Below the pieces are notes generated by a model. It did not search any database. It saw only the letters and a list, made by a program, of their open reading frames with translations, and was not told where the DNA came from. DNA of 64,000 nt from the IMG/VR virus record IMGVR_UViG_3300032245_001860, positions 1 to 64,000 of that record; one strand, 5' to 3'. Positions within the stretch are counted from its first letter, which is position 1. Each line of letters opens with the position of its first letter. Shown piece by piece: positions 2-28,788 of the stretch. The translations under genes were made by a program, and so were the position numbers.

Positions 2-1045
2 GTCAAGCCAGAATCTGATGTACGCCTTCAGGACGCTTCGACCCTGACCAATGGCATGACCCTTACAAAGTCTGGTCTCAATTCGCTTCGGTCATTCACT
101 GACATTCCATCGTCCATGGTTTCGTTCTTGGAAGAGCGTGGGTTTGAAGAAGACTTGACCCGTTTTGTCAATTCCGAATTGAACCGCCGGGAACAAGACT
201 GGTCAAACGATGGCAAGGAATCAAGAGAATTCCGTGTCCGTGTCCGCCAAGATGAGAATGGCAACGATGCTGTACGGGCTGTTGTATCTGGTCGATATGG
301 TGTGATTGATAACCATGAGGCTATGGAAATGATTGCAAATTCTTTGCCTTCATTGTCTGATGCGCTTGCATCCCACATATCCAATGATGGAGATGATATC
401 TTTGGTAACGTGCTTTTACCAGACTACATGAAGAGTGAACCAGACTCTGATTATGGGGTAGGCATTGCATTCCGCAACAGCGAGATTAAGAATTCTACCT
501 TCAACATCTCACCGTTCCTGTTCCGTGCCATCTGCCTTAACGGTATGATTTGGGGTCGGCAGGATTCCAGTATCCAAATTAACCAAAAGCATCTTGGCAA
601 CATTGACCGTGCGGAATTGCAACATAAGGTTAACCATGCCGTCAAGGTTGCATTGACACAAGGCAATGACCTTTTGACTTTGCTTGGACATTCCAAGAAA
701 GTTAAGGTTGACAACCCATTGCAGGTGATTGCACAACTCTCCCGTGATAATGGTATGACCATTGAACAAGGACGTGCATGGCACAAGGGATACTTGGAAT
801 CCCTTGGTGAGGCTAACGGTCAACTACATGACCGTTCTGCATTCGGTATTGTCAACGGTTTGACCCGTTCTGCCCAACTTTACAAGGGTTCTACCCGTGA
901 AAGCATGGAAACAACCGCTTCTTTGATACTTTCACCTGCTATTGATGCAGATTTGCAGGCAATAAGCAAAAGATGGGGCAGAATTGCCGATAATGCATCA
1001 CAATTGAAGGAAAAAGTGGTGCAACAGTACGCTTATATAGGCTAA
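2..1045 (+). CDS. DUF932-family phage protein (5' end outside window)
   Basis: Frame is open from position 2; NSEI..STFNISPFLFRAICLNGMI motif and C-terminal F.IVNGLT resemble DUF932. Confidence 0.65.
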   Translation, partial: VKPESDVRLQDASTLTNGMTLTKSGLNSLRSFTDIPSSMVSFLEERGFEEDLTRFVNSELNRREQDWSNDGKESREFRVRVRQDENGNDAVRAVVSGRYGVIDNHEAMEMIANSLPSLSDALASHISNDGDDIFGNVLLPDYMKSEPDSDYGVGIAFRNSEIKNSTFNISPFLFRAICLNGMIWGRQDSSIQINQKHLGNIDRAELQHKVNHAVKVALTQGNDLLTLLGHSKKVKVDNPLQVIAQLSRDNGMTIEQGRAWHKGYLESLGEANGQLHDRSAFGIVNGLTRSAQLYKGSTRESMETTASLILSPAIDADLQAISKRWGRIADNASQLKEKVVQQYAYIG

Positions 1046-1233: not shown

Positions 1234-3219
1234 ATGATAGTTGATGACATGAGAGCCACAGTTTTGGTCAATGGAACGATGACAGAATCGTTCTTTACTG
1301 TAAAGCAAGAGAACCTTGCACATATCTTTTCTATTCTACGCAACAATTTGTATTCTGATAAGGCTGGCGCAATCATCCGTGAATATTGCACAAATGCCTA
1401 TGATGCTCACGTTCAAGCTGGCATCAAAGATACTCCAATTTCAATCAAGTGTCCAACATCATTCCACCAATTGCTTTGCATTCGTGACTATGGTTATGGT
1501 TTGTCAGAAGATGAGATTTTCAACATCTATGCATCCTATGGTGAATCCACAAAGCGTAACACAAATGACCAAGTAGGAATGATGGGTTTGGGTTCCAAGT
1601 CTGCATTCTCTTACACTGATTCATTCACCATCATATCTTACAATCAAGGTATGCAGAAAAATTACCTTGCATACATTGATGATTCTGGCATTGGTAAGGT
1701 CATGAAGGTAGAAGAGAATCCAACCACTGAGACTGGAATTGAAATTCAAATTCCTGTAGCACGTTTTGATTGTTACAAGTTTGAGAATGCCATCACCAAA
1801 CAATTGAAATTTTTCAGTCCAAAGCCTGTTATCAATCTCGCATATGTCCAAAGGTCTTTAGAAGAGAATCTCAATATTCACATCCATGGTGATGGGTACG
1901 ATATCATCAATTCCTACGACACACATTTTGTTGTGATGGGGAATGTTGCATATCCTTTTACCACTGAGACATTTGAGAATCACCCGCATTTCAAAGATGC
2001 AATTAACAGCTTAACTGAACATTCATTAAAAATTGTTCTGTATGCAAAGATAGGTGATGTAATACCATCTGCTTCCCGTGAATCTCTTGACTTATGTGAG
2101 AAGACCATCAATTGGATTGGTAATGCGTTAATCAATGTATCTGATGACGTTAAGCAAAACCTTGTCAGCCAAATGGATGCTTCCGACACAATCTGGAATA
2201 CAAAAGTAAGATTCTCAAATCTGAAATCCAAATTCCAAAGATTATTGACTGGCTACACAAAAGATGGCATTCTGTGTGATTCAAACCAGACTGATGTACC
2301 AAAGATTCCACTCATCACCGCCAAGAGACTGAATGAGAATAAGTTTGAGACTGTTGAGAAAATTTACAATACATCCCGGACTGTAATCTATGTTAGTAAA
2401 GGTGACGTAACATCTGGCTCAATCAAAAAGCGGATTAAGTTGGACAATCATTCATCTGATTTGTTGTATGCTGTTGAATGCAAAGATAGAGCCACATACA
2501 ATGAATTTATCAATCATCCTGAAATCATCGGCGCAAACATCATAGACCTTGCGACAATTGAACTACCAAAGATTGAACGTGAGAAAACAGCCTCCAATCA
2601 TGATGCTTATCAGTTTGTAGGTGACAGATATAACAATCAACCAAGAGATGCATGGCAAAAGACCCGTGTTAATTTCAAACTTGGAACAGGCGTATACATC
2701 AAGATTAGCAATTATAATGTCGAAGGCTTCTCTCCACATATGATGTACAAGGTACTTGAATCTCTTAAGGACTTGGGACATGAAATCACCTTGTATGGCA
2801 TTCGAGATAGTGATTCATCAAAATTGGGTGCTGGCTGGAAACACCTTAAAGTTTACGTGCAAGAGGTCATAGATAATTTGCCACAATCATTCAAGGATAG
2901 TGCTTCCAGAGGTTACATCCATGATTATATTGATATTGATACACGCTCTTTGTACGATTCATTTGCTCACTTAGATAATGACCCATTCAACTTTAAGGAC
3001 ATTGTAGACTTTGATAACTACAATTATGATGACACTAAAGCAATTCAAACGATAAGTTTGTTCATTAACTGTAATTTCAGATATGATTTGACAAAAGAGA
3101 AGCAAATTGTCAATGAATTGAAAGAATTACGGTCAAAGTATCCCTTAATTAAGTATACACAGATACATAGCGGTTCAATACCGTACATTAAGGAGTACAT
3201 TGAGGCTATGAACAGGTAG
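1234..3219 (+). CDS. rIIA: rIIA-like protein with N-terminal GHKL/HATPase domain
   Basis: LYSDK..IIREYCTNAYDAH, IRDYGYGLS and GMMGLGSKSAFSY motifs; directly upstream of rIIB-like gene. Confidence 0.88.
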   Translation: MIVDDMRATVLVNGTMTESFFTVKQENLAHIFSILRNNLYSDKAGAIIREYCTNAYDAHVQAGIKDTPISIKCPTSFHQLLCIRDYGYGLSEDEIFNIYASYGESTKRNTNDQVGMMGLGSKSAFSYTDSFTIISYNQGMQKNYLAYIDDSGIGKVMKVEENPTTETGIEIQIPVARFDCYKFENAITKQLKFFSPKPVINLAYVQRSLEENLNIHIHGDGYDIINSYDTHFVVMGNVAYPFTTETFENHPHFKDAINSLTEHSLKIVLYAKIGDVIPSASRESLDLCEKTINWIGNALINVSDDVKQNLVSQMDASDTIWNTKVRFSNLKSKFQRLLTGYTKDGILCDSNQTDVPKIPLITAKRLNENKFETVEKIYNTSRTVIYVSKGDVTSGSIKKRIKLDNHSSDLLYAVECKDRATYNEFINHPEIIGANIIDLATIELPKIEREKTASNHDAYQFVGDRYNNQPRDAWQKTRVNFKLGTGVYIKISNYNVEGFSPHMMYKVLESLKDLGHEITLYGIRDSDSSKLGAGWKHLKVYVQEVIDNLPQSFKDSASRGYIHDYIDIDTRSLYDSFAHLDNDPFNFKDIVDFDNYNYDDTKAIQTISLFINCNFRYDLTKEKQIVNELKELRSKYPLIKYTQIHSGSIPYIKEYIEAMNR

Positions 3220-5642: not shown

Positions 5643-5803
5643 TTTCACTTGGATTGTTTCATGCCTTTCTTACCAAGTGAAAACCAATCCCCCTCTTTCA
5701 GGCAGAGGGGGATTTCCTTATTTATGGGGTTATAATATTATAACCCCAAGATCTTGTTCTAAATAAAATTTGCACAGATTTAATTTATGTGATATAAAAG
5801 GAT

Positions 5804-7274: not shown

Positions 7275-7438
7275 GAGTCAATATTGAAACAGAATGAGAG
7301 CTATCCCCCAGTTTAGTAGTGTTTTCTGGGGGATTTTTTATGCATGGGGTTATAATATTATAACCCCAATTCTCTTACTCAAAATAAAATTTGCATTTCA
7401 AGATATTGTGATATAATGAGCCATCAGAGGTAAATACA

Positions 7439-8315: not shown

Positions 8316-8383
8316 TGGTGGATAGCTTAAGTAGAGCAGAGGAACATAAGCCTTTGATATGGGTGCAAATCCCATTCCACCTT
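8316..8383 (+). tRNA. Degenerate tRNA-like element, CAT anticodon
   Basis: GGTGGA/TCCACC acceptor, ATGGG-TGCAAAT-CCCAT T arm, irregular anticodon arm. Confidence 0.5.
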
Positions 8384-18625: not shown

Positions 18626-18706
18626 AAAAAAGCCCAGCAATAAATTACTGAGCTTTTTCTGAAGGAGTTTGAAATGAATAACAAGTTGAAAATGAAAGGT
18701 TCAACA
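18626..18706 (-). ncRNA. Putative small antisense RNA complementary to an RBS+AUG
   Basis: TTGACA-N16-TATACT promoter (18739-18712), no sense ORF, terminator at 18626-18658; complementary to GAAGGAGTTTGAAATG. Confidence 0.6.
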
Positions 18707-18761
18707 TGTTAAGTATACCTGTTTTTCAAATAATGTCAAGGGGAATTTCTTCCCCTTGTTT

Positions 18762-22824: not shown

Positions 22825-24043
22825 TTATTTCCACATATTTTTAGGCTTGGTAGACCTTTCACCGGGCATATAGAATTTCTTAATCTTATTCTTGTTGTAT
22901 GTCCAGCGTCCAACCAATTCGCCTAAGGGATTTTCATCAGTAGCCTTGTAAATAGCAAAATACCAGCCTTCAAGCGCATATTTCTTTGCTGTTTCCTTAG
23001 CCTGAATCAAAGTGGTGCAAGGCGTTAAAGATTTGGTTTTATCCCAAGTTTCGCCGATAACGATTCTGTATAGTGTCATAGGTTAAGTATATCAGTTTAT
23101 ATCAAAAATGCAAGGAAAATTATTTTATTTGACATAAAAAAATGGGGTGGTTTTTATACCACCCCAAAATCCTGCCAACAATATAAATTATTAGCAGGAT
23201 AGAACTTTTTTCTAATTTACTCCAGTTTCCAGTCTGACGGAATATGATTTGTTTTTAGCCCATTGCATTCCAAACAAATCAAAAATTCCAATTACTAATA
23301 ACGCAATATGCCATTCTTCAAACTGACTATGAATATCAACTACACTGCCAAAAGTAAATTTGGTGTTTTCATAAAAGATTGAAAACATCAGAGCTGCAAC
23401 AAAAACCTGAACATACAAACATAACTTTTCATAACTCTTTAACTTCATAACTTTTCTCCTACACAGGTAGTATACCACAATATACTACCTGTGTTAATTA
23501 ATTTTAAGGAAGATTTGCGACAAAGTCACTCAGGAAGGAATCGTAATTTCTTTTAGAGTTATCCTTAAGAATACGCTCTATGGTCATGCGACTTTCGAGT
23601 AATTTGTAATGGGAATCATTGTTTTGTTTTTCGATGAGTTTTTCGATGGATTCTTTAAGCTCTTCTGACTTAACATAGAATGAAGCATCAATATCATCCA
23701 GTGTTGCGATAAAGTCTTCAGCAACCAAACCACCATGTTGAGATTTCTTGCCATGAGAGAGACGAGCAACCTCAGTAACAGGAACAAGCATCCAATCAAT
23801 CTTAGAATCAAGTGTGCCAATTCCAAGCAGATGAATTGCCATGTTGATAGTTTCCATCTGATTGAAGTTTTGCACAGAACTGTTAAGGTCAGTTACAGAA
23901 ACTTTCAATTGATAATCTTCACCATTGTAAACAAAATATTTAATCTTGTTCTTGATAATAAGAGAGTCACCCAAAATTTCTTTGAGCGATTCAAGACCAT
24001 AAGTGTTAATGCTTCGGTTTTTCATAACTGGATTGTATCTCAC
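22825..24043 (-). CDS. Hypothetical genes (22825-23079, 23212-~23448 membrane protein, 23504-~24025)
   Basis: Each has its own extended -10 promoter. Confidence 0.55.
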
Positions 24044-24061
24044 TTTATATCAGAGCGCAAG

Positions 24062-24113
24062 AAAAAAAGACCAGATATTTCTACCTGGTCTGAATGAAAG
24101 ACAAACTATGAGC
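24062..24113 (-). ncRNA. Putative ~50-nt antisense RNA complementary to an RBS+AUG
   Basis: TTGCAT-N16-TATAAT extended promoter (24147-24120); complementary to GAATGAAAGACAAACTATG; terminator AGACCAG/CTGGTCT. Confidence 0.55.
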
Positions 24114-24254
24114 ACACTTATTATATCAAAATATATTTATCATGCAAATTAATTTATTTCTTTATTCTGGGGTTATAATATTATAACCCCATGAGCTGTT
24201 TCGCAAATAAAAAAATATCCCTTGACAAGTGCCAAGGGATGTGATAGTGGAGTT

Positions 24255-24851
24255 TTAGTCTTTGAAGCGGTCTGCGTTGGTCTCGATGACTCGCTTGGCT
24301 TCCGCTACCGTCATGAGGTCAATCAATGCTTTTTCAATGACCTTTTCCATCTGTTCAATTTCAAAGTCACCATTCTTTGTGTAGATGGCGTTTGTGCCGT
24401 ATCGGGTTGTATTGAATCCGACATTGTTCTTGAAATTGTTTACCACAATATGGAAATTGCGGATGAGGTCTTCGTACACTTCATCATTGTTTGAGGAGAT
24501 GAAGGTAAGGTGCGTAAAGTGTTGATTCTTGCGGTCACGGGTATTCTCATACCAGTAATTCTTGTGGAACCACTTGCGAGATGCGTCTGAACCCTTCTCG
24601 GCATGAATGCGGGTAACCAAGAGAATTGGCGTACCATTGTAAGAGAACAAGTAATCGCCAGTATGCTTGAAATCTAAAATACCCAAGCCACCATCAAACA
24701 TATCTGCGGTAATCTTGTTTGTGCCTGTGAGAAGGCTGTTAAGTTCATTGTACTTTGTTACCAGTACGCTGTTGACAACAAACAAGCTATCTTGTTGAGC
24801 CTGAGATTGAGGGGTTGTTGCACCGTGAGAACCAATTTGAATACCTTGCAT
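24255..24851 (-). CDS. Hypothetical protein
   Basis: 198 aa, AAGGAGG RBS, sole gene of its cassette. Confidence 0.7.
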   Translation of the reverse strand: MQGIQIGSHGATTPQSQAQQDSLFVVNSVLVTKYNELNSLLTGTNKITADMFDGGLGILDFKHTGDYLFSYNGTPILLVTRIHAEKGSDASRKWFHKNYWYENTRDRKNQHFTHLTFISSNNDEVYEDLIRNFHIVVNNFKNNVGFNTTRYGTNAIYTKNGDFEIEQMEKVIEKALIDLMTVAEAKRVIETNADRFKD

Positions 24852-25071
24852 CGTATTCCTCCTTGTTGATAGTATACCACATTATCAACCCTGTGCAAGA
24901 AAAAACTTTTTATTTGACAGGTGATTTTTGGGGTGGTACAACTACCACCCCAATCCAGGCTTTGTAAATAAAAAAATATTTTTTATTTTTTCTTGACAAA
25001 AACCTGGAAAGATGGTAGCTGAAAAATATATTAAAGCATCCCTTGACTTTCATCAAGGGATGTGGTGCAGG

Positions 25072-25952
25072 TCAGGCGCATACCTCACGTTTGCGCAGAA
25101 CATTAACCAATCTGCTGTTTTCCGCTTCAATGTCACCTCTTGAGATAAGGTTCTTAATTGCATTCTCAGGCGTATCATCGCACAGGTTAGAATGAATCTC
25201 AAGAGTGTTACCGAAACTGTAAAGGTATTGAATTGGGAAGCGATACAGTTGATTGTGTACACGCTCTCGCATTGAATCAGAGAAAGGTTGATAATACATA
25301 CGGTCTTCCTTGCCGTTTCCAAGTTTGGCATATGCCATTGCCTTTCCAACGGATTGAAAGAACTCCAAAGCCCAAAGGAAGGTATCGACAATGCCTTCAT
25401 ATGCAAAGACATACAGTTCGCTTGAATTCCAAGCGCAGGCAATACAATCCTGCCCGTTGGCTGTTCGACCTACAAAGAGAGACTTGACCGACGATGATTG
25501 GAAATTCTTGATTTCCCAGAGGTGCATAGTGTTTTCCATGGCTTAAATATACCACCTTATACCAGCAGTTCGCAAGTAATTAGGTGTGAAAAAATACACT
25601 AAAAATAAATTTGACAAACTGAAAAAAGTGTGATAGAAAAATATTTAATTTGACATTTTTTCTGGGGTGGTATTTGTACCACCCCAATTGAGGCTTTGCA
25701 AAATAAAAAAATAAATTTAAAAATCCCTTGACATCTGCCAAGGGATATGGTAGCTGTCTACTCTGCGTAGATTTTTAGTTGATTGGTTTCAGGAATAAAC
25801 CTTGTTTCAAATTCATCATTGTTGATGAAATCTGCAATTTTTGCATTGAATTCTTCTTCGGTCATACCTTCTGTGTAACCAAGGTCAGACATGGAGAGTT
25901 CCCAGAATCGATTGGTAGAAAAGGTGAGTTCTACTTGTGTATCTTTGTTCAT
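25072..25952 (-). CDS. Two single-gene cassettes (25072-25539 and 25758-25952)
   Basis: Leaderless-type starts, ATCCCTTGAC-type terminators. Confidence 0.6.
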
Positions 25953-26965
25953 GTCTATATATTACAGTATAAAGTGGTATGATGTCAAATTTATTAATGT
26001 AAGAATTAATAACTAATTAGCCCTTGCATCTGATTATATAAAGTGGTATATTATGTACATGAACGATATGTACCGACCAACAGCCTACGTCATCGAAGCC
26101 GGTATGCAAAAAGCATATGTGCTAATCCTCCACAGAATCATCAAGAACAGCATCAAGAATAAATTTGTTCTTGCTGAAGCAGACCGCATACTTGAAGAAT
26201 CAAACACTGCCTATGAACGTGCAAAGGCTAAAGCAATAGAGATGTAGGCTCTATCATATAACCAGAGTTTTGTCAAGTAAAAAATTATTTTATTTGATAA
26301 AACTTTGGGGTGGTTTGTGTACCACCCCAAAACCCCTAATGCAATATAAATTTTACATTAGGGGTTTTTATTTACTAAGGGTAAAGTATGTAACCTACTA
26401 AACCATAACGACGTAGACAATGTGTAATTCCTGCCATGGAATTCGTTGTTGCCAATAGCTCACCATTTGGGTGATATAACTCATACAGCATATTTCTGTA
26501 TTTGACTGTGCCTGTTTTCATAACAGGCACATTATATCATTTTAGAATGTTACTTGGCAACAATTCCCCTTTGTGTATAGAATTTACTTCCATCATTGAG
26601 AATCCACTCTGTGTTATATTGGCGAGCATACTTCTCACCCAGTTCTTGTGCATTGCTACCAGATGCAAGCAACAATCCATTCCGGAATGCAGAGAATTTC
26701 ATCTTTGGCATATTGGTGACAAAGGTAACAATAATCTTGTCTGTAGTGTTCATGTCAATAGTATACCACAATATACTATCTAAACAAATTAAATTAACTT
26801 GCTGTGGATCCATTGCAATCGTTATATAAGATGGTATACTTACTCTATGAACATAATCATCTCCATCATCGGCATCATCTTGAGTGCTATTCTATTGCTG
26901 GGTACTATCACAATCAACAAAGAAAAGTAATTTGCAAAGTCTATATAAGGTGGTATACTTAACCT

Positions 26966-27136
26966 ATGAACGAAAACGATGACCCAATGTTTACAATGTT
27001 CGTCTCCCAAGCCCTTCAGGAACTTGCCAAACAAAAGCCTGATGTGTCGCAAGAAGACCTCTACGAAGAGGCTATTGAACTTGCATACGAGCGATGGGAT
27101 TCCTACTGCGAATCACAATACTTTCAGGGAGAGTAA
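26966..27136 (+). CDS. Small acidic 56-aa protein (not in ORF track)
   Basis: TGG-TATACT-N6-ATG; MNENDDPMF...YFQGE. Confidence 0.55.
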   Translation: MNENDDPMFTMFVSQALQELAKQKPDVSQEDLYEEAIELAYERWDSYCESQYFQGE

Positions 27137-27239
27137 AATCTCCCTACCACACAATCTCTTTCTTGTCAAATTAAATTATTTTATTTTCAAGAAAGGGATT
27201 GGGGTGATAATATTATCACCCCATAATACAAGATATAAT

Positions 27240-27309
27240 AAAAAAAAGACCAGACAAATAAATCATCTGGTCTATAAAAAGTACCTTTTAGAAAGATAAC
27301 CAATGTATC
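27240..27309 (-). ncRNA. Putative antisense RNA, paralogue of 24062-24113
   Basis: TTGCAG-N17-TAGAAT promoter; complementary to AGAAAGATAACCAATG; same AGACCAG/CTGGTCT terminator stem. Confidence 0.5.
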
Positions 27310-27453
27310 AACACTATTCTACCCAATCATCGTTATCTCTGCAAGGTTTTCCCCATGATTTTATTGTCAAAGTCATAAGAAGACCGAAGCCGATAAAACT
27401 AACAGCGCAAATGATGATGATAGCGTGTACAATAGGGTTCATGTTTATATGAT

Positions 27454-28392: not shown

Positions 28393-28788
28393 TTATCTAT
28401 AACTTGCTACTAAATTTTCTGCATATTTTACTACTGTTTCATTTCTTAGATATATATGTTGTTTTCTGTGACAATTAGCACATAACATCATACATTTATC
28501 TAATTCGTTTTTGACATCTTCCCATTTACGTGATTCTATCTTGTCGCCAAGTTCAAAAGATTTATTATTTCTGTCAATATGATGAAAATCAAACATTTCA
28601 AGATCATCAATTGTTTTTCTTTCAATACCACAAATTTCGCATTTGTTATTTTTGTAATTTGATGCTGATATTCTTCTTGCAAGTCTTTTTGATTTTCTTT
28701 TGCAAATGATACATAGTTGAATAGCATCTGTTTTATGTTTTATTTCCCTATTGCAACATTTACAAAAAGAATTATAATAAACTATCAT
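28393..28788 (-). CDS. HNH endonuclease
   Basis: KCEICG, FDFHHID and ELDKCMMLCANCHRKQH motifs. Confidence 0.88.
   Translation of the reverse strand: MIVYYNSFCKCCNREIKHKTDAIQLCIICKRKSKRLARRISASNYKNNKCEICGIERKTIDDLEMFDFHHIDRNNKSFELGDKIESRKWEDVKNELDKCMMLCANCHRKQHIYLRNETVVKYAENLVASYR

What the first reader, a model, noticed from the sequence alone, without database searches (positions are those of the whole stretch)
24062..27344. Paralogous pair of minimal antisense RNAs (seed plus terminator)
Seen: 24062-24113 and 27240-27309 each have a promoter, a 5' seed complementary to GAAAGA-N6-ATG (GAAAGACAAACTATG and GAAAGATAACCAATG) and an AGACCAG/CTGGTCT terminator stem. Inference: a common scaffold with diverged guides aimed at different initiation regions. 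The second could instead be a 3' UTR of a small membrane-protein ORF.
Basis: partly seen in the sequence, partly recalled or inferred. Interest (0 to 1): 0.7.

Follow-up and report, generated by a model that had tools for sequence, protein, structure and literature searches.

The report
Promoter and terminator punctuation, phage cassettes
The two supposed guide RNAs are most likely ordinary transcription signals of a gene-shuffling region of a freshwater jumbo phage: one is a promoter that runs straight into a terminator with no gene between them, and the other is the tail end of a tiny membrane-protein gene.

Summary
Both elements are real and lie on the minus strand. e1 is a strong sigma-70 promoter (-35 24147-24142, TG-extended -10 24125-24120). 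About 25 nt downstream comes a strong intrinsic terminator (24091-24068 plus T7), so the predicted RNA is about 52 nt. A second promoter for a leaderless 173-aa gene follows directly. e2 (terminator 27273-27247 plus T8) sits 40 nt after the stop codon of a 42-aa membrane-protein gene that is under purifying selection. A promoter-like TTGCAG-17-TAGAAT overlaps that gene's last codons.

The shared features are weak evidence of kinship. The AGACCAG stem is generic in phages, and a 12/15 "seed" match occurs in 5% of random terminator pairs of this genome.

In more distant relatives the promoter hexamers and the terminators are kept. The "seed" is the least conserved part of both elements: it is replaced, with indels, at or above the neutral rate. 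I found no complementary target above chance in the phage, no Rfam match and no listed RNA run.

The region is a PeSL-like cassette-shuffling zone. e1's promoter is a PeSL promoter copy. Best reading: e1 is an ORF-less cassette or insulator, and e2 is a 3' UTR with its terminator. A real small RNA is not excluded.

The parts
24169..24190 (-). PeSL-like hairpin GGGGTTATAATATTATAACCCC that heads the e1 cassette
   Evidence: One of 25 such hairpins, all between 1134 and 27222. It is 100% conserved in L133. It is the boundary of the cassette deletion in L003.
24120..24147 (-). e1 promoter P1: -35 TTGCAT (24147-24142), 16-nt spacer, TG-extended -10 TATAAT (24125-24120), preceded by the AT-rich block AAATAAATTAAT
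   Evidence: Listed. It is a copy of the PeSL promoter subtype also found at 5726, 7346 and 17871. In relatives the -35 is unchanged and the -10 shows only TATAAT to TATACT in L133, while 8 of 16 spacer positions vary.
24062..24113 (-). Predicted e1 transcript of about 52 nt (start inferred 7 nt after the -10; not shown experimentally)
   Evidence: Read from the sequence and folded. It contains no ATG-initiated ORF. No RNA run was listed.
24092..24105 (-).
   Evidence: Replaced by GTAAAACCTAACTCTC in L133, and by similar variants with indels in runs X12, X13 and X19. The first 8 nt of the transcript, GCTCATAG (24113-24106), never vary.
24068..24091 (-). e1 intrinsic terminator hairpin, followed by a T-run (24067-24062)
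   Evidence: It is among the few strong terminators, and the only minus-strand one in the cassette region, with no ORF of 30 aa or more ending within 150 nt upstream. It differs at 1 of 24 positions in L133. The 24089 A>G variant keeps a G-U pair.
24025..24060 (-). Promoter P2 (TTGCGC 24060-24055, 17-nt spacer, TACAAT 24037-24032), then 6 nt and ATG 24025 of the 173-aa gene (leaderless arrangement)
   Evidence: The 6-nt spacing is kept in L133 although the promoter sequence diverged. The 6-nt class is enriched.
27314..27442 (-). 42-aa single-pass membrane-protein gene whose 3' end carries e2
   Evidence: Intact in 10 of 10 relatives, with divergence by codon position of 0.07-0.09, 0-0.02 and 0.21-0.30. 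Its promoter is TTGACA-17-TATCAT plus 6 nt plus ATG.
27316..27344 (-). Promoter-like TTGCAG-17-TAGAAT overlapping the last codons and stop of the 42-aa gene (candidate internal promoter of e2)
   Evidence: It is conserved in relatives, but it lies inside coding sequence, so that is uninformative. It is below the threshold of the generic scan.
27274..27313 (-).
   Evidence: Two haplotypes exist: A is 40 nt; B is 24 nt (ATTGTAAACATTTTTTCCTTTTGT) and lacks the seed. Indels at 27277-27290 are seen in L002, L003 and run X3.
27239..27273 (-). e2 intrinsic terminator (hairpin 27273-27247 plus T8)
   Evidence: The stem is invariant in 10 relatives and only the loop varies.
27201..27222 (-). PeSL-like hairpin directly after the e2 terminator, followed by a fossil PeSL promoter (27199-27145)
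   Evidence: Runs X3 and X13 carry a canonical 23-nt junction in its place (table 5c).

Best explanation
Both elements are transcription punctuation of a cassette-shuffling (PeSL-like) early region of an uncultured 316-kb freshwater phage. They are not sequence-specific guide RNAs.

e1 is an ORF-less cassette. A standard PeSL promoter, with the first few nucleotides of its usual 5' UTR, is joined directly to a strong intrinsic terminator. It can make at most a roughly 52-nt early RNA. Its terminator stops transcription from the PeSL promoter about 7 nt before the -35 of the next promoter. That next promoter must start transcription exactly at the A of the ATG of a leaderless 173-aa gene. e1 therefore works as an insulator or a relic, and the sequence between its promoter and terminator is free to drift.

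e2 is the 3' UTR and terminator of a real, leaderless 42-aa membrane-protein gene.

The two terminators probably share ancestry through local cassette duplication.

Shown: the signals themselves, their conservation pattern, and the cassette indels. Inferred: the transcription start sites, that transcripts exist, the insulating role, and the origin by loss of an ORF.
For: (1) Context.
- 25 GGGGTGRTA...TAYCACCCC hairpins, each followed by an AT-rich block and a promoter, occur only between 1134 and 27222.
- Relatives differ by whole cassettes bounded at these hairpins. L003 lacks 24205-23167 and 26275-25707. Metagenome contigs show joints such as 24192>27199 and 24920>26306.
- This matches the description of PeSLs (PMC2839356, PMC4122927).

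(2) e1's promoter.
- It is a copy of the PeSL subtype at 5726, 7346 and 17871.
- Its first transcribed bases, CTCATAG(G), resemble the 5' UTRs of those copies (CCATCAGAGG, CTATCATAAGGAGG). Type B keeps AGGTAAAAC, like the Shine-Dalgarno region AGGTAAATAC at 7346.
- From reading the flanks, e1 was the only PeSL promoter I saw that is not followed by a gene (not checked exhaustively).

(3) Divergence, window against L133.
- Third codon positions of the flanking gene: 45%. Promoter spacer: 50%.
- Constrained parts: -35 0/6, -10 1/6, first 14 transcribed nt 2/14, terminator 1/24.
- The 'seed' is unalignable, with a 2-nt indel. The same pattern appears in runs X12, X13 and X19.

(4) e2.
- The 42-aa ORF is under purifying selection.
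- The 3' UTR between the stop codon and the terminator has two haplotypes that differ by a 16-nt indel, while the terminator stem is invariant.

(5) Leaderless genes.
- A spacing of -10 plus 6 nt plus ATG occurs 13 times in the first 30 kb, against 0-3 for other spacings. It holds for the gene after e1 in both haplotypes.

(6) Tests of the guide idea.
- No targets above chance in the phage.
- No pairing with the neighbouring mRNA.
- No Rfam family.
Against: - A strong promoter and a strong terminator have both been maintained about 25 nt apart over substantial divergence. That is also what a real small-RNA gene would look like.
- The invariant first 8 nt (GCTCATAG) are not explained by insulation alone.
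- e2 does have a promoter-like site at the matching distance from the CAT...TCTTTC motif. TTGCAN-16..18-TANAAT occurs only 4 times in 30 kb, and two of those are e1 and e2.
- e1-e2 is the top non-self alignment in the genome.
- Conservation of the PeSL part may reflect concerted evolution rather than selection.
- No transcript data exist and the host genome is unknown, so host targets were never tested.
- No relative with an ORF between P1 and the terminator was found, so the 'lost ORF' origin is only inferred.
Confidence: 0.55

Rival explanations
1. e1 alone is a genuine early phage small RNA of about 52 nt: a 5' single strand followed by a terminator hairpin and a U-tail. It would act in trans on a host transcript or protein. 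Its fast-changing middle would reflect adaptation to different hosts or an arms race. e2 is just a 3' UTR.
For: - P1 is strong, with an AT-rich upstream block and a TG-extended -10.
- The hexamers, the first 8 transcribed nt and the terminator are maintained while neutral sites changed 45-50%.
- No ORF lies in the unit.
- The RNA has an unstructured U-rich 5' part followed by a stable hairpin and U7. From general knowledge, this is the architecture of Hfq-type sRNAs.
Against: - In known trans-acting sRNAs the seed is the most conserved part (general knowledge). Here it is the least conserved.
- No phage target above chance.
- No Rfam match.
- No RNA run listed.
- The promoter is simply a PeSL copy.
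- The unit is absent, together with its cassette, from the close relative L003.
Confidence: 0.2
2. One reading: e1 and e2 are paralogous minimal antisense RNAs. They share one scaffold (promoter, CAU..UCUUUC region, AGACCAG terminator) and carry different guides against translation-initiation regions. e2 would be a 3'-UTR-derived sRNA with its own promoter inside the coding sequence.
For: - Collinear similarity from the -35 to the T-run is the best non-self hit in the genome.
- Both have TTGCAN-16/17-TANAAT.
- The CAT and TCTTTC motifs lie within 1 nt of the same distance from the -10.
- The shared 7-bp outer stem is unique to the two elements within the genome.
Against: - The margin over background is small, 46 against 41-42.
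- A 12/15 seed identity occurs in 5% of random terminator pairs.
- MAFFT gives a different alignment that I judge no better.
- TCTTTC is absent from the type B versions of both e1 and e2, so the common motif is not ancestral.
- e1's promoter is closer to the PeSL at 7346 than to e2.
- GAAAGA-N6-ATG occurs only 5 times in the genome, and the three sites other than e1 and e2 themselves were not shown to be gene starts.
- No further scaffold copies exist.
Confidence: 0.08
3. e2 belongs to a type I toxin-antitoxin-like pair, or to an overlapping-gene pair. In this reading the small hydrophobic 42-aa protein is opposed by a plus-strand RNA, or a 49-aa ORF (27303-27452), that starts at the GAAAGA-N6-ATG.
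For: - The 42-aa product has a single hydrophobic transmembrane stretch and a charged tail.
- The plus-strand ATG with a purine-rich stretch upstream is kept in both 3' UTR haplotypes: GAAAGAtaaccaATG and AAGGAaaaaATG.
- The antisense ORF stays open in 8 of 10 relatives.
- A TATAAT lies at 27234-27239 on the plus strand.
Against: - The antisense ORF is cut by a stop codon in L002 and L140.
- Its openness follows from the lack of Tyr, His and Gln codons in the sense gene.
- The codon-position divergence (pos2 < pos1 < pos3) fits the minus ORF, not the plus one.
- The plus-strand -35 has a poor 15-nt spacing.
- No Pfam or PHROG hit.
- Small membrane proteins are common in phage early regions (general knowledge).
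Confidence: 0.07

Closest known systems
PeSLs (promoter-early stem-loops) of T4-type phages (Arbiol et al. 2010, PMC2839356; Comeau et al. 2014, PMC4122927)
   Same: - A repeated composite intergenic element of about 100 bp: a G-tract/C-tract stem-loop, an AT-rich block and a sigma-70-type promoter.
- It is concentrated in a region of small ORFan genes.
- Relatives differ by whole cassettes bounded by the elements.
- e1's promoter is one of these copies and e2's terminator abuts another.
   Different: - The phage is an uncultured 316-kb freshwater virus. Its rIIA is at most 31% identical to any known phage's. A search for T4 Gp23 found nothing, though that search's controls did not ring either.
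- The hairpin sits inside a longer inverted repeat, TTATTTGACA-N9-hairpin-N9-TGTCAAATAA.
- Separate T-run terminators usually precede it.
- Many downstream genes are leaderless rather than led by a Shine-Dalgarno sequence.
- I did not see an ORF-less PeSL cassette such as e1 described in the passages I read.
Ordinary Rho-independent (intrinsic) terminators
   Same: A G+C-rich hairpin followed by 7-8 T. The e2 terminator lies 40 nt after a stop codon. The same stem plus T-run appears in more than 117 unrelated viral contigs.
   Different: The e1 terminator has no gene upstream. It lies about 25 nt from a promoter and about 7 nt before the -35 of the next one.
Hfq-type trans-acting sRNAs and 3'-UTR-derived sRNAs with internal promoters, such as MicL and DapZ (recalled from general knowledge, not tested here)
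   Same: A short RNA with a single-stranded 5' region, a terminator hairpin and a U-tail. For e2, a candidate promoter lies inside the upstream coding sequence.
   Different: The seed is the least conserved part rather than the most conserved. No targets were found, there is no transcript evidence, and there is no Rfam family.

Membership tests
PeSL composite promoter/stem-loop cassettes | Repeated conserved intergenic motif with a stem-loop rich in G and C tracts | tested here: met
   25 copies of GGGGTGRTA-loop-TAYCACCCC between 1134 and 27222, and essentially none elsewhere in 316 kb.
PeSL composite promoter/stem-loop cassettes | Sigma-70-like early promoter with an AT-rich upstream region next to the stem-loop | tested here: met
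   AAATAAATTAAT followed by TTGCAN-16/17-TAtAcT lies downstream of the hairpins. This is a consensus match only; promoter activity was not measured.
PeSL composite promoter/stem-loop cassettes | Insertions, deletions and replacements between close relatives have their end points in the elements | tested here: met
   L003 lacks 24205-23167 and 26275-25707, with break points at the hairpins. Joints at 24192, 24245, 24920, 25686, 26306 and 27199 appear in metagenome contigs.
PeSL composite promoter/stem-loop cassettes | Host phage is a T4-type myovirus | tested here: inconclusive
   An rIIA gene is present but only distantly related to known ones. The Gp23 profile found nothing, but its controls did not ring either.
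Trans-acting base-pairing sRNA (seed plus terminator) | A discrete transcript exists | not testable with these tools
   No RNA run was listed for the locus. Only DNA metagenome runs hold it.
Trans-acting base-pairing sRNA (seed plus terminator) | Seed region conserved at least as well as the rest of the RNA | tested here: not met
   The e1 middle (24092-24105) and the e2 3' UTR middle are replaced, with indels, in type B relatives, while the terminators and the first 8 nt are kept.
Trans-acting base-pairing sRNA (seed plus terminator) | Complementary target sites above chance | tested here: inconclusive
   Phage genome: 9 non-self 11-mers for e1, against 4.5 +/- 3.9 in shuffles. The single 12-mer match lies inside a coding region. 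e2 is below the shuffle mean. The neighbouring mRNA shows no better pairing than shuffles. The host is unknown and was not tested.
Trans-acting base-pairing sRNA (seed plus terminator) | Own promoter and Rho-independent terminator | tested here: met
   Clearly met for e1. For e2 there is only a moderate promoter-like site inside the coding sequence.
Type I toxin-antitoxin | Small hydrophobic toxin ORF with an overlapping antisense RNA that has its own promoter | tested here: inconclusive
   The 42-aa transmembrane ORF is real. The antisense promoter is poor and the antisense ORF is not consistently kept. Toxicity was not tested.
Any curated RNA family (Rfam 15) | Match at or above the gathering score | tested here: not met
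   Only tRNAs reach the gathering score in the window. The best hit near e2 is ncr1241 at 30 bits against a threshold of 60. Nothing hits e1.

The most novel reading that the evidence does not exclude
e1, and perhaps e2, is a minimal phage small-RNA gene built from a constant promoter, 5' tag and terminator scaffold. Its roughly 14-nt middle is swapped between strains, as a fast-evolving guide that retargets host or competitor transcripts during early infection, and it is carried and exchanged as part of PeSL-type cassettes.
Probability: 0.1. Interest if true: 0.7.

Novelty: new member of a known kind. Interest (0 to 1): 0.27.

Why it matters
As guide RNAs the two elements would have been a new class of phage regulators, but the evidence points to ordinary signals.

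Three points remain of modest interest:
- PeSL-like shuffling cassettes, described so far for T4-type phages, also organise the early region of a very distant freshwater jumbo phage.
- Many of its cassette genes are leaderless, with a fixed 6-nt distance between the -10 and the ATG. Precise promoter placement and upstream termination therefore matter functionally.
- A promoter-terminator unit without a gene has been maintained across diverged strains. It is a cheap, testable candidate for a natural transcriptional insulator or a non-specific early RNA.

Tried and rejected
- **Known phages.** Near and distant DNA searches of the region found no match.
- **Rfam.** Searches at gathering and at permissive thresholds found nothing for e1 and only a sub-threshold terminator-like hit for e2.
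- **More scaffold copies.**
  - A regex over the genome found only the two.
  - AGACCAG-N-CTGGTCTTTTTT in IMG/VR gave more than 117 unrelated terminators.
  - Adding TCTTTC gave 12 loci. Only the near-identical relatives carry the elements. L119, L128 and L129 have a loosely similar TATAAT...CATTGATTTCTTTC...terminator at the end of an unrelated gene, in phages that share almost nothing with this genome. I judged this to be chance or generic.
- **The 14-aa plus-strand ORF at e1** (MSTLIISKYIYHAN). Rejected: it merely spans the promoter, and its residues change with the promoter spacer.
- **The 49-aa plus-strand ORF at e2.** Rejected as a gene.
- **Leaderless mini-ORFs on the e1 and e2 RNAs.** None is conserved.
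- **Pairing of the e1 middle with the 5' end of the downstream leaderless mRNA,** tested in both haplotypes. No better than shuffles.
- **Finding more distant relatives.**
  - The 508-aa neighbour returned only the same close relative.
  - The 91-aa neighbour returned close relatives plus a contig cut at the gene.
  - The genome search 'relatives' is not available for virus records.
- **RNA-seq runs.** None was listed.
Full report
**What the window is**

The window is the first 64 kb of a single 315,852-bp virus record with 33% G+C.
- It carries rIIA (1234-3219), four or five tRNAs, sigma-70-type promoters, Shine-Dalgarno sites and intrinsic terminators.
- No known phage is close. DNA searches found nothing, and rIIA is at most 31% identical to that of any known phage.
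- Public runs that hold it are freshwater metagenomes.

**The observation**

Read on the minus strand, both elements are intrinsic terminators with the same outer 7-bp stem.
- e1 is AGACCAGGTAGAAATATCTGGTCT plus T7 (24091-24068).
- e2 is AGACCAGATGATTTATTTGTCTGGTCT plus T8 (27273-27247).
- They fold at -14.1 and -17.2 kcal/mol, with z about -2.9.
- They are the only two such hairpins in the genome.
- Upstream of each lies a 15-mer, CATAGTTTGTCTTTC in e1 and CATTGGTTATCTTTC in e2, identical at 12 of 15 positions.

e1 has a convincing promoter: TTGCAT, 16 nt, TGaTATAAT (24147-24120). The inferred start is G at 24113, which gives an RNA of about 52 nt with no ORF.

e2 lies 40 nt after the stop codon of a 42-aa ORF (27314-27442). 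The sequence TTGCAG-17-TAGAAT overlaps that ORF's last codons.

**How much of this exceeds chance**

- The stem plus T-run is generic.
- A 12/15 match within 45 nt upstream occurs in 5% of all pairs of this genome's 68 strong terminators.
- A local alignment from the -35 to the T-run makes e2 the best non-self match of e1 in the genome, but it scores 46 against 41-42 for the next hits.
- MAFFT gives a different alignment, which I judge no better.
- TTGCAN-16..18-TANAAT is rare, with 4 occurrences in the first 30 kb, two of which are e1 and e2.
- GAAAGA-N6-ATG occurs only 5 times in the genome, so it is not a common start context.

My reading: common ancestry of the two terminators is plausible because they are near each other, on the same strand and share a stem unique in the genome. 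Wider paralogy is not established.

**Context**

The first 27 kb contain 25 copies of a hairpin, GGGGTGRTA-loop-TAYCACCCC.
- On the gene strand each hairpin is usually preceded by a T-run terminator.
- Each is followed by an AT-rich block and a TTGCAN-17-TAtAcT promoter.
- A 94%-identical relative (L001/L002) is collinear. Another (L003) lacks exactly 24205-23167 (e1, the 173-aa gene and an 88-aa gene) and 26275-25707, with break points at the hairpins.
- Contigs from four freshwater runs show many more such joints.
- This matches the PeSL elements of T4-type phages: a stem-loop plus a strong early promoter that mediate modular shuffling of ORFan cassettes (PMC2839356, PMC4122927).
- The neighbouring genes have no Pfam or PHROG function.

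**e1 in this frame**

- Its promoter follows the hairpin at 24190-24169. It is a copy of the promoter behind the three other hairpins of the same subtype, at 5726, 7346 and 17871.
- Those promoters drive genes with ordinary leaders: GAGCCATCAGAGGTAAATACAATG and TCTATCATAAGGAGGTAGTTATG.
- The first transcribed bases of e1, GCTCATAG(G), resemble the beginning of those leaders. The type B version of e1 continues AGGTAAAAC, like the Shine-Dalgarno region at 7346.
- In e1 a terminator follows instead of a start codon.
- About 7 nt after the T-run comes a second promoter, TTGCGC-17-TACAAT. Exactly 6 nt after it comes the ATG of the 173-aa gene.
- This 6-nt spacing marks a class. It occurs 48 times genome-wide, against 23-35 for other spacings, and 13 against 0-3 in the first 30 kb.
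- Three other leaderless genes use the PeSL promoter itself.
- From reading the flanks, e1 was the only PeSL promoter I saw with no gene. Its terminator is among the few strong ones with no ORF of 30 aa or more ending within 150 nt upstream.

**Comparative test of the 'seed'**

For e1, a metagenome contig (L133) encodes the 173-aa protein at 81% identity. Compared with the window:

| Segment | Divergence, window vs L133 |
|---|---|
| Third codon positions of the gene | 45% |
| P1 spacer | 8/16 |
| Hairpin plus AT-rich block | 0/43 |
| -35 | 0/6 |
| -10 | 1/6 |
| First 14 transcribed nt | 2/14 |
| Terminator | 1/24 |
| Middle, TTTGTCTTTCATTC | replaced by GTAAAACCTAACTCTC |

- Contigs of runs X12, X13 and X19 show the same pattern. 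All differences inside e1 cluster at 24093-24105 and include indels. None falls in the hexamers. One stem change (24089 A>G) keeps a G-U pair.

For e2, eight further contigs encode the 42-aa protein.
- The gene is under purifying selection, with divergence by codon position of 0.07-0.09, 0-0.02 and 0.21-0.30.
- The terminator stem is invariant.
- The 3' UTR exists in two forms, and form B is 16 nt shorter and lacks GGTTATCTTTC.

The proposed seed is thus the least constrained segment of both elements. The TCTTTC that links them exists only in one haplotype of each. In known base-pairing sRNAs the seed is the best conserved part (general knowledge).

**Targets and transcripts**

- Complementary 9- to 12-mers in the phage genome are not enriched over shuffles. 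The single 12-mer match, at 131223, lies inside a coding region.
- The variable middle of e1 does not pair with the 5' end of the adjacent leaderless mRNA better than shuffles, in either haplotype.
- No RNA run was listed.
- The host is unknown, so host targets remain untested.

**Plus-strand readings**

- The 14-aa ORF opposite e1 merely spans the promoter.
- The 49-aa ORF opposite the 42-aa gene stays open in 8 of 10 relatives. This follows from the absence of Tyr, His and Gln codons in the sense gene, and the ORF is cut by a stop in L002 and L140. The codon-position pattern fits the minus ORF.

**Conclusion**

e2 is the 3' UTR and terminator of a small leaderless membrane-protein gene. e1 is a PeSL promoter joined to a terminator with no gene between them. 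It is most simply a cassette that lost, or never had, its ORF. It is retained because the terminator shields the precisely positioned leaderless promoter behind it.

That a roughly 52-nt RNA is made is likely from the signals but not shown. That it has a sequence-specific function is not supported, though it is not excluded either.

My confidence in the punctuation/insulator reading is about 0.55.

Noticed in passing
window 1134-27222: There are 25 PeSL-like hairpins, GGGGTGRTA-loop-TAYCACCCC. Each sits inside a longer inverted repeat, TTATTTGACA-N9-hairpin-N9-TGTCAAATAA. The 5' arm and loop (TGaTAATAT) also read as an extended -10 placed 16-17 nt after the TTGACA, on either strand. Relatives differ by whole cassettes bounded at these elements.
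   Followed up: partly
window 10795, 13178, 18538, 21193, 23079, 24025, 25539, 25952, 26059, 26753, 26847, 26966, 27442 (start codons): A class of apparently leaderless genes: -10 hexamer, exactly 6 nt, then ATG. This spacing occurs 48 times genome-wide against 23-35 for other spacings, and 13 against 0-3 in the first 30 kb. Other genes of the same phage have ordinary Shine-Dalgarno leaders. The spacing is kept in L133 even though the promoter sequence diverged.
   Followed up: partly
window 18632-18760, both strands: A second very short unit. On the minus strand: TTGACA-16-TATACT, 4 nt, an ATG-initiated 20-aa ORF, then the terminator GCTCAGTAATTTATTGCTGGGC plus T7. On the plus strand, overlapping it: GAAGGAG, 7 nt, a 12-aa ORF and the terminator CAAGGGGAATTTCTTCCCCTTG plus T5. 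This could be a convergent pair of mini-transcripts.
   Followed up: no
window 27303-27452 (+): A 49-aa ORF lies fully antisense to the 42-aa membrane-protein gene. Both 3' UTR haplotypes have a purine-rich stretch before its ATG. It is open in 8 of 10 relatives and cut by a stop in L002 and L140. It is explained by the codon composition of the sense gene.
   Followed up: yes
window 27145-27199 (-): A fossil PeSL promoter: the AT-rich block and TTGACA are kept, but the -10 is lost where it meets the 3' end of the convergent 56-aa gene. Contigs in runs X3 and X13 carry the canonical 23-nt junction CTTTTTTATTTGTCATGAGAAGC instead.
   Followed up: partly
window 8316-8383 (+): Rfam calls a weak fifth tRNA (39 bits) directly before tRNA-Met. 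ARAGORN does not report it.
   Followed up: no
loci L007, L011, L015, L016, L018, L044, L054, L056, L059, L070, L082, L090, L097, L118 and others: About 20 unrelated IMG/VR contigs share a conserved element...CTCTGCAAACAnGAA-AGACCAGTCAGCCACACTGGTCTTTTTT-GGCTATAAT... It looks like a structured RNA 3' end plus terminator followed by a promoter. It belongs to a different phage group.
   Followed up: no
window 28393-28788 (-): A 131-aa ORF with several CxxC pairs and an HH...N...H pattern resembles an HNH-type endonuclease. It had no Pfam hit at E <= 0.01.
   Followed up: no
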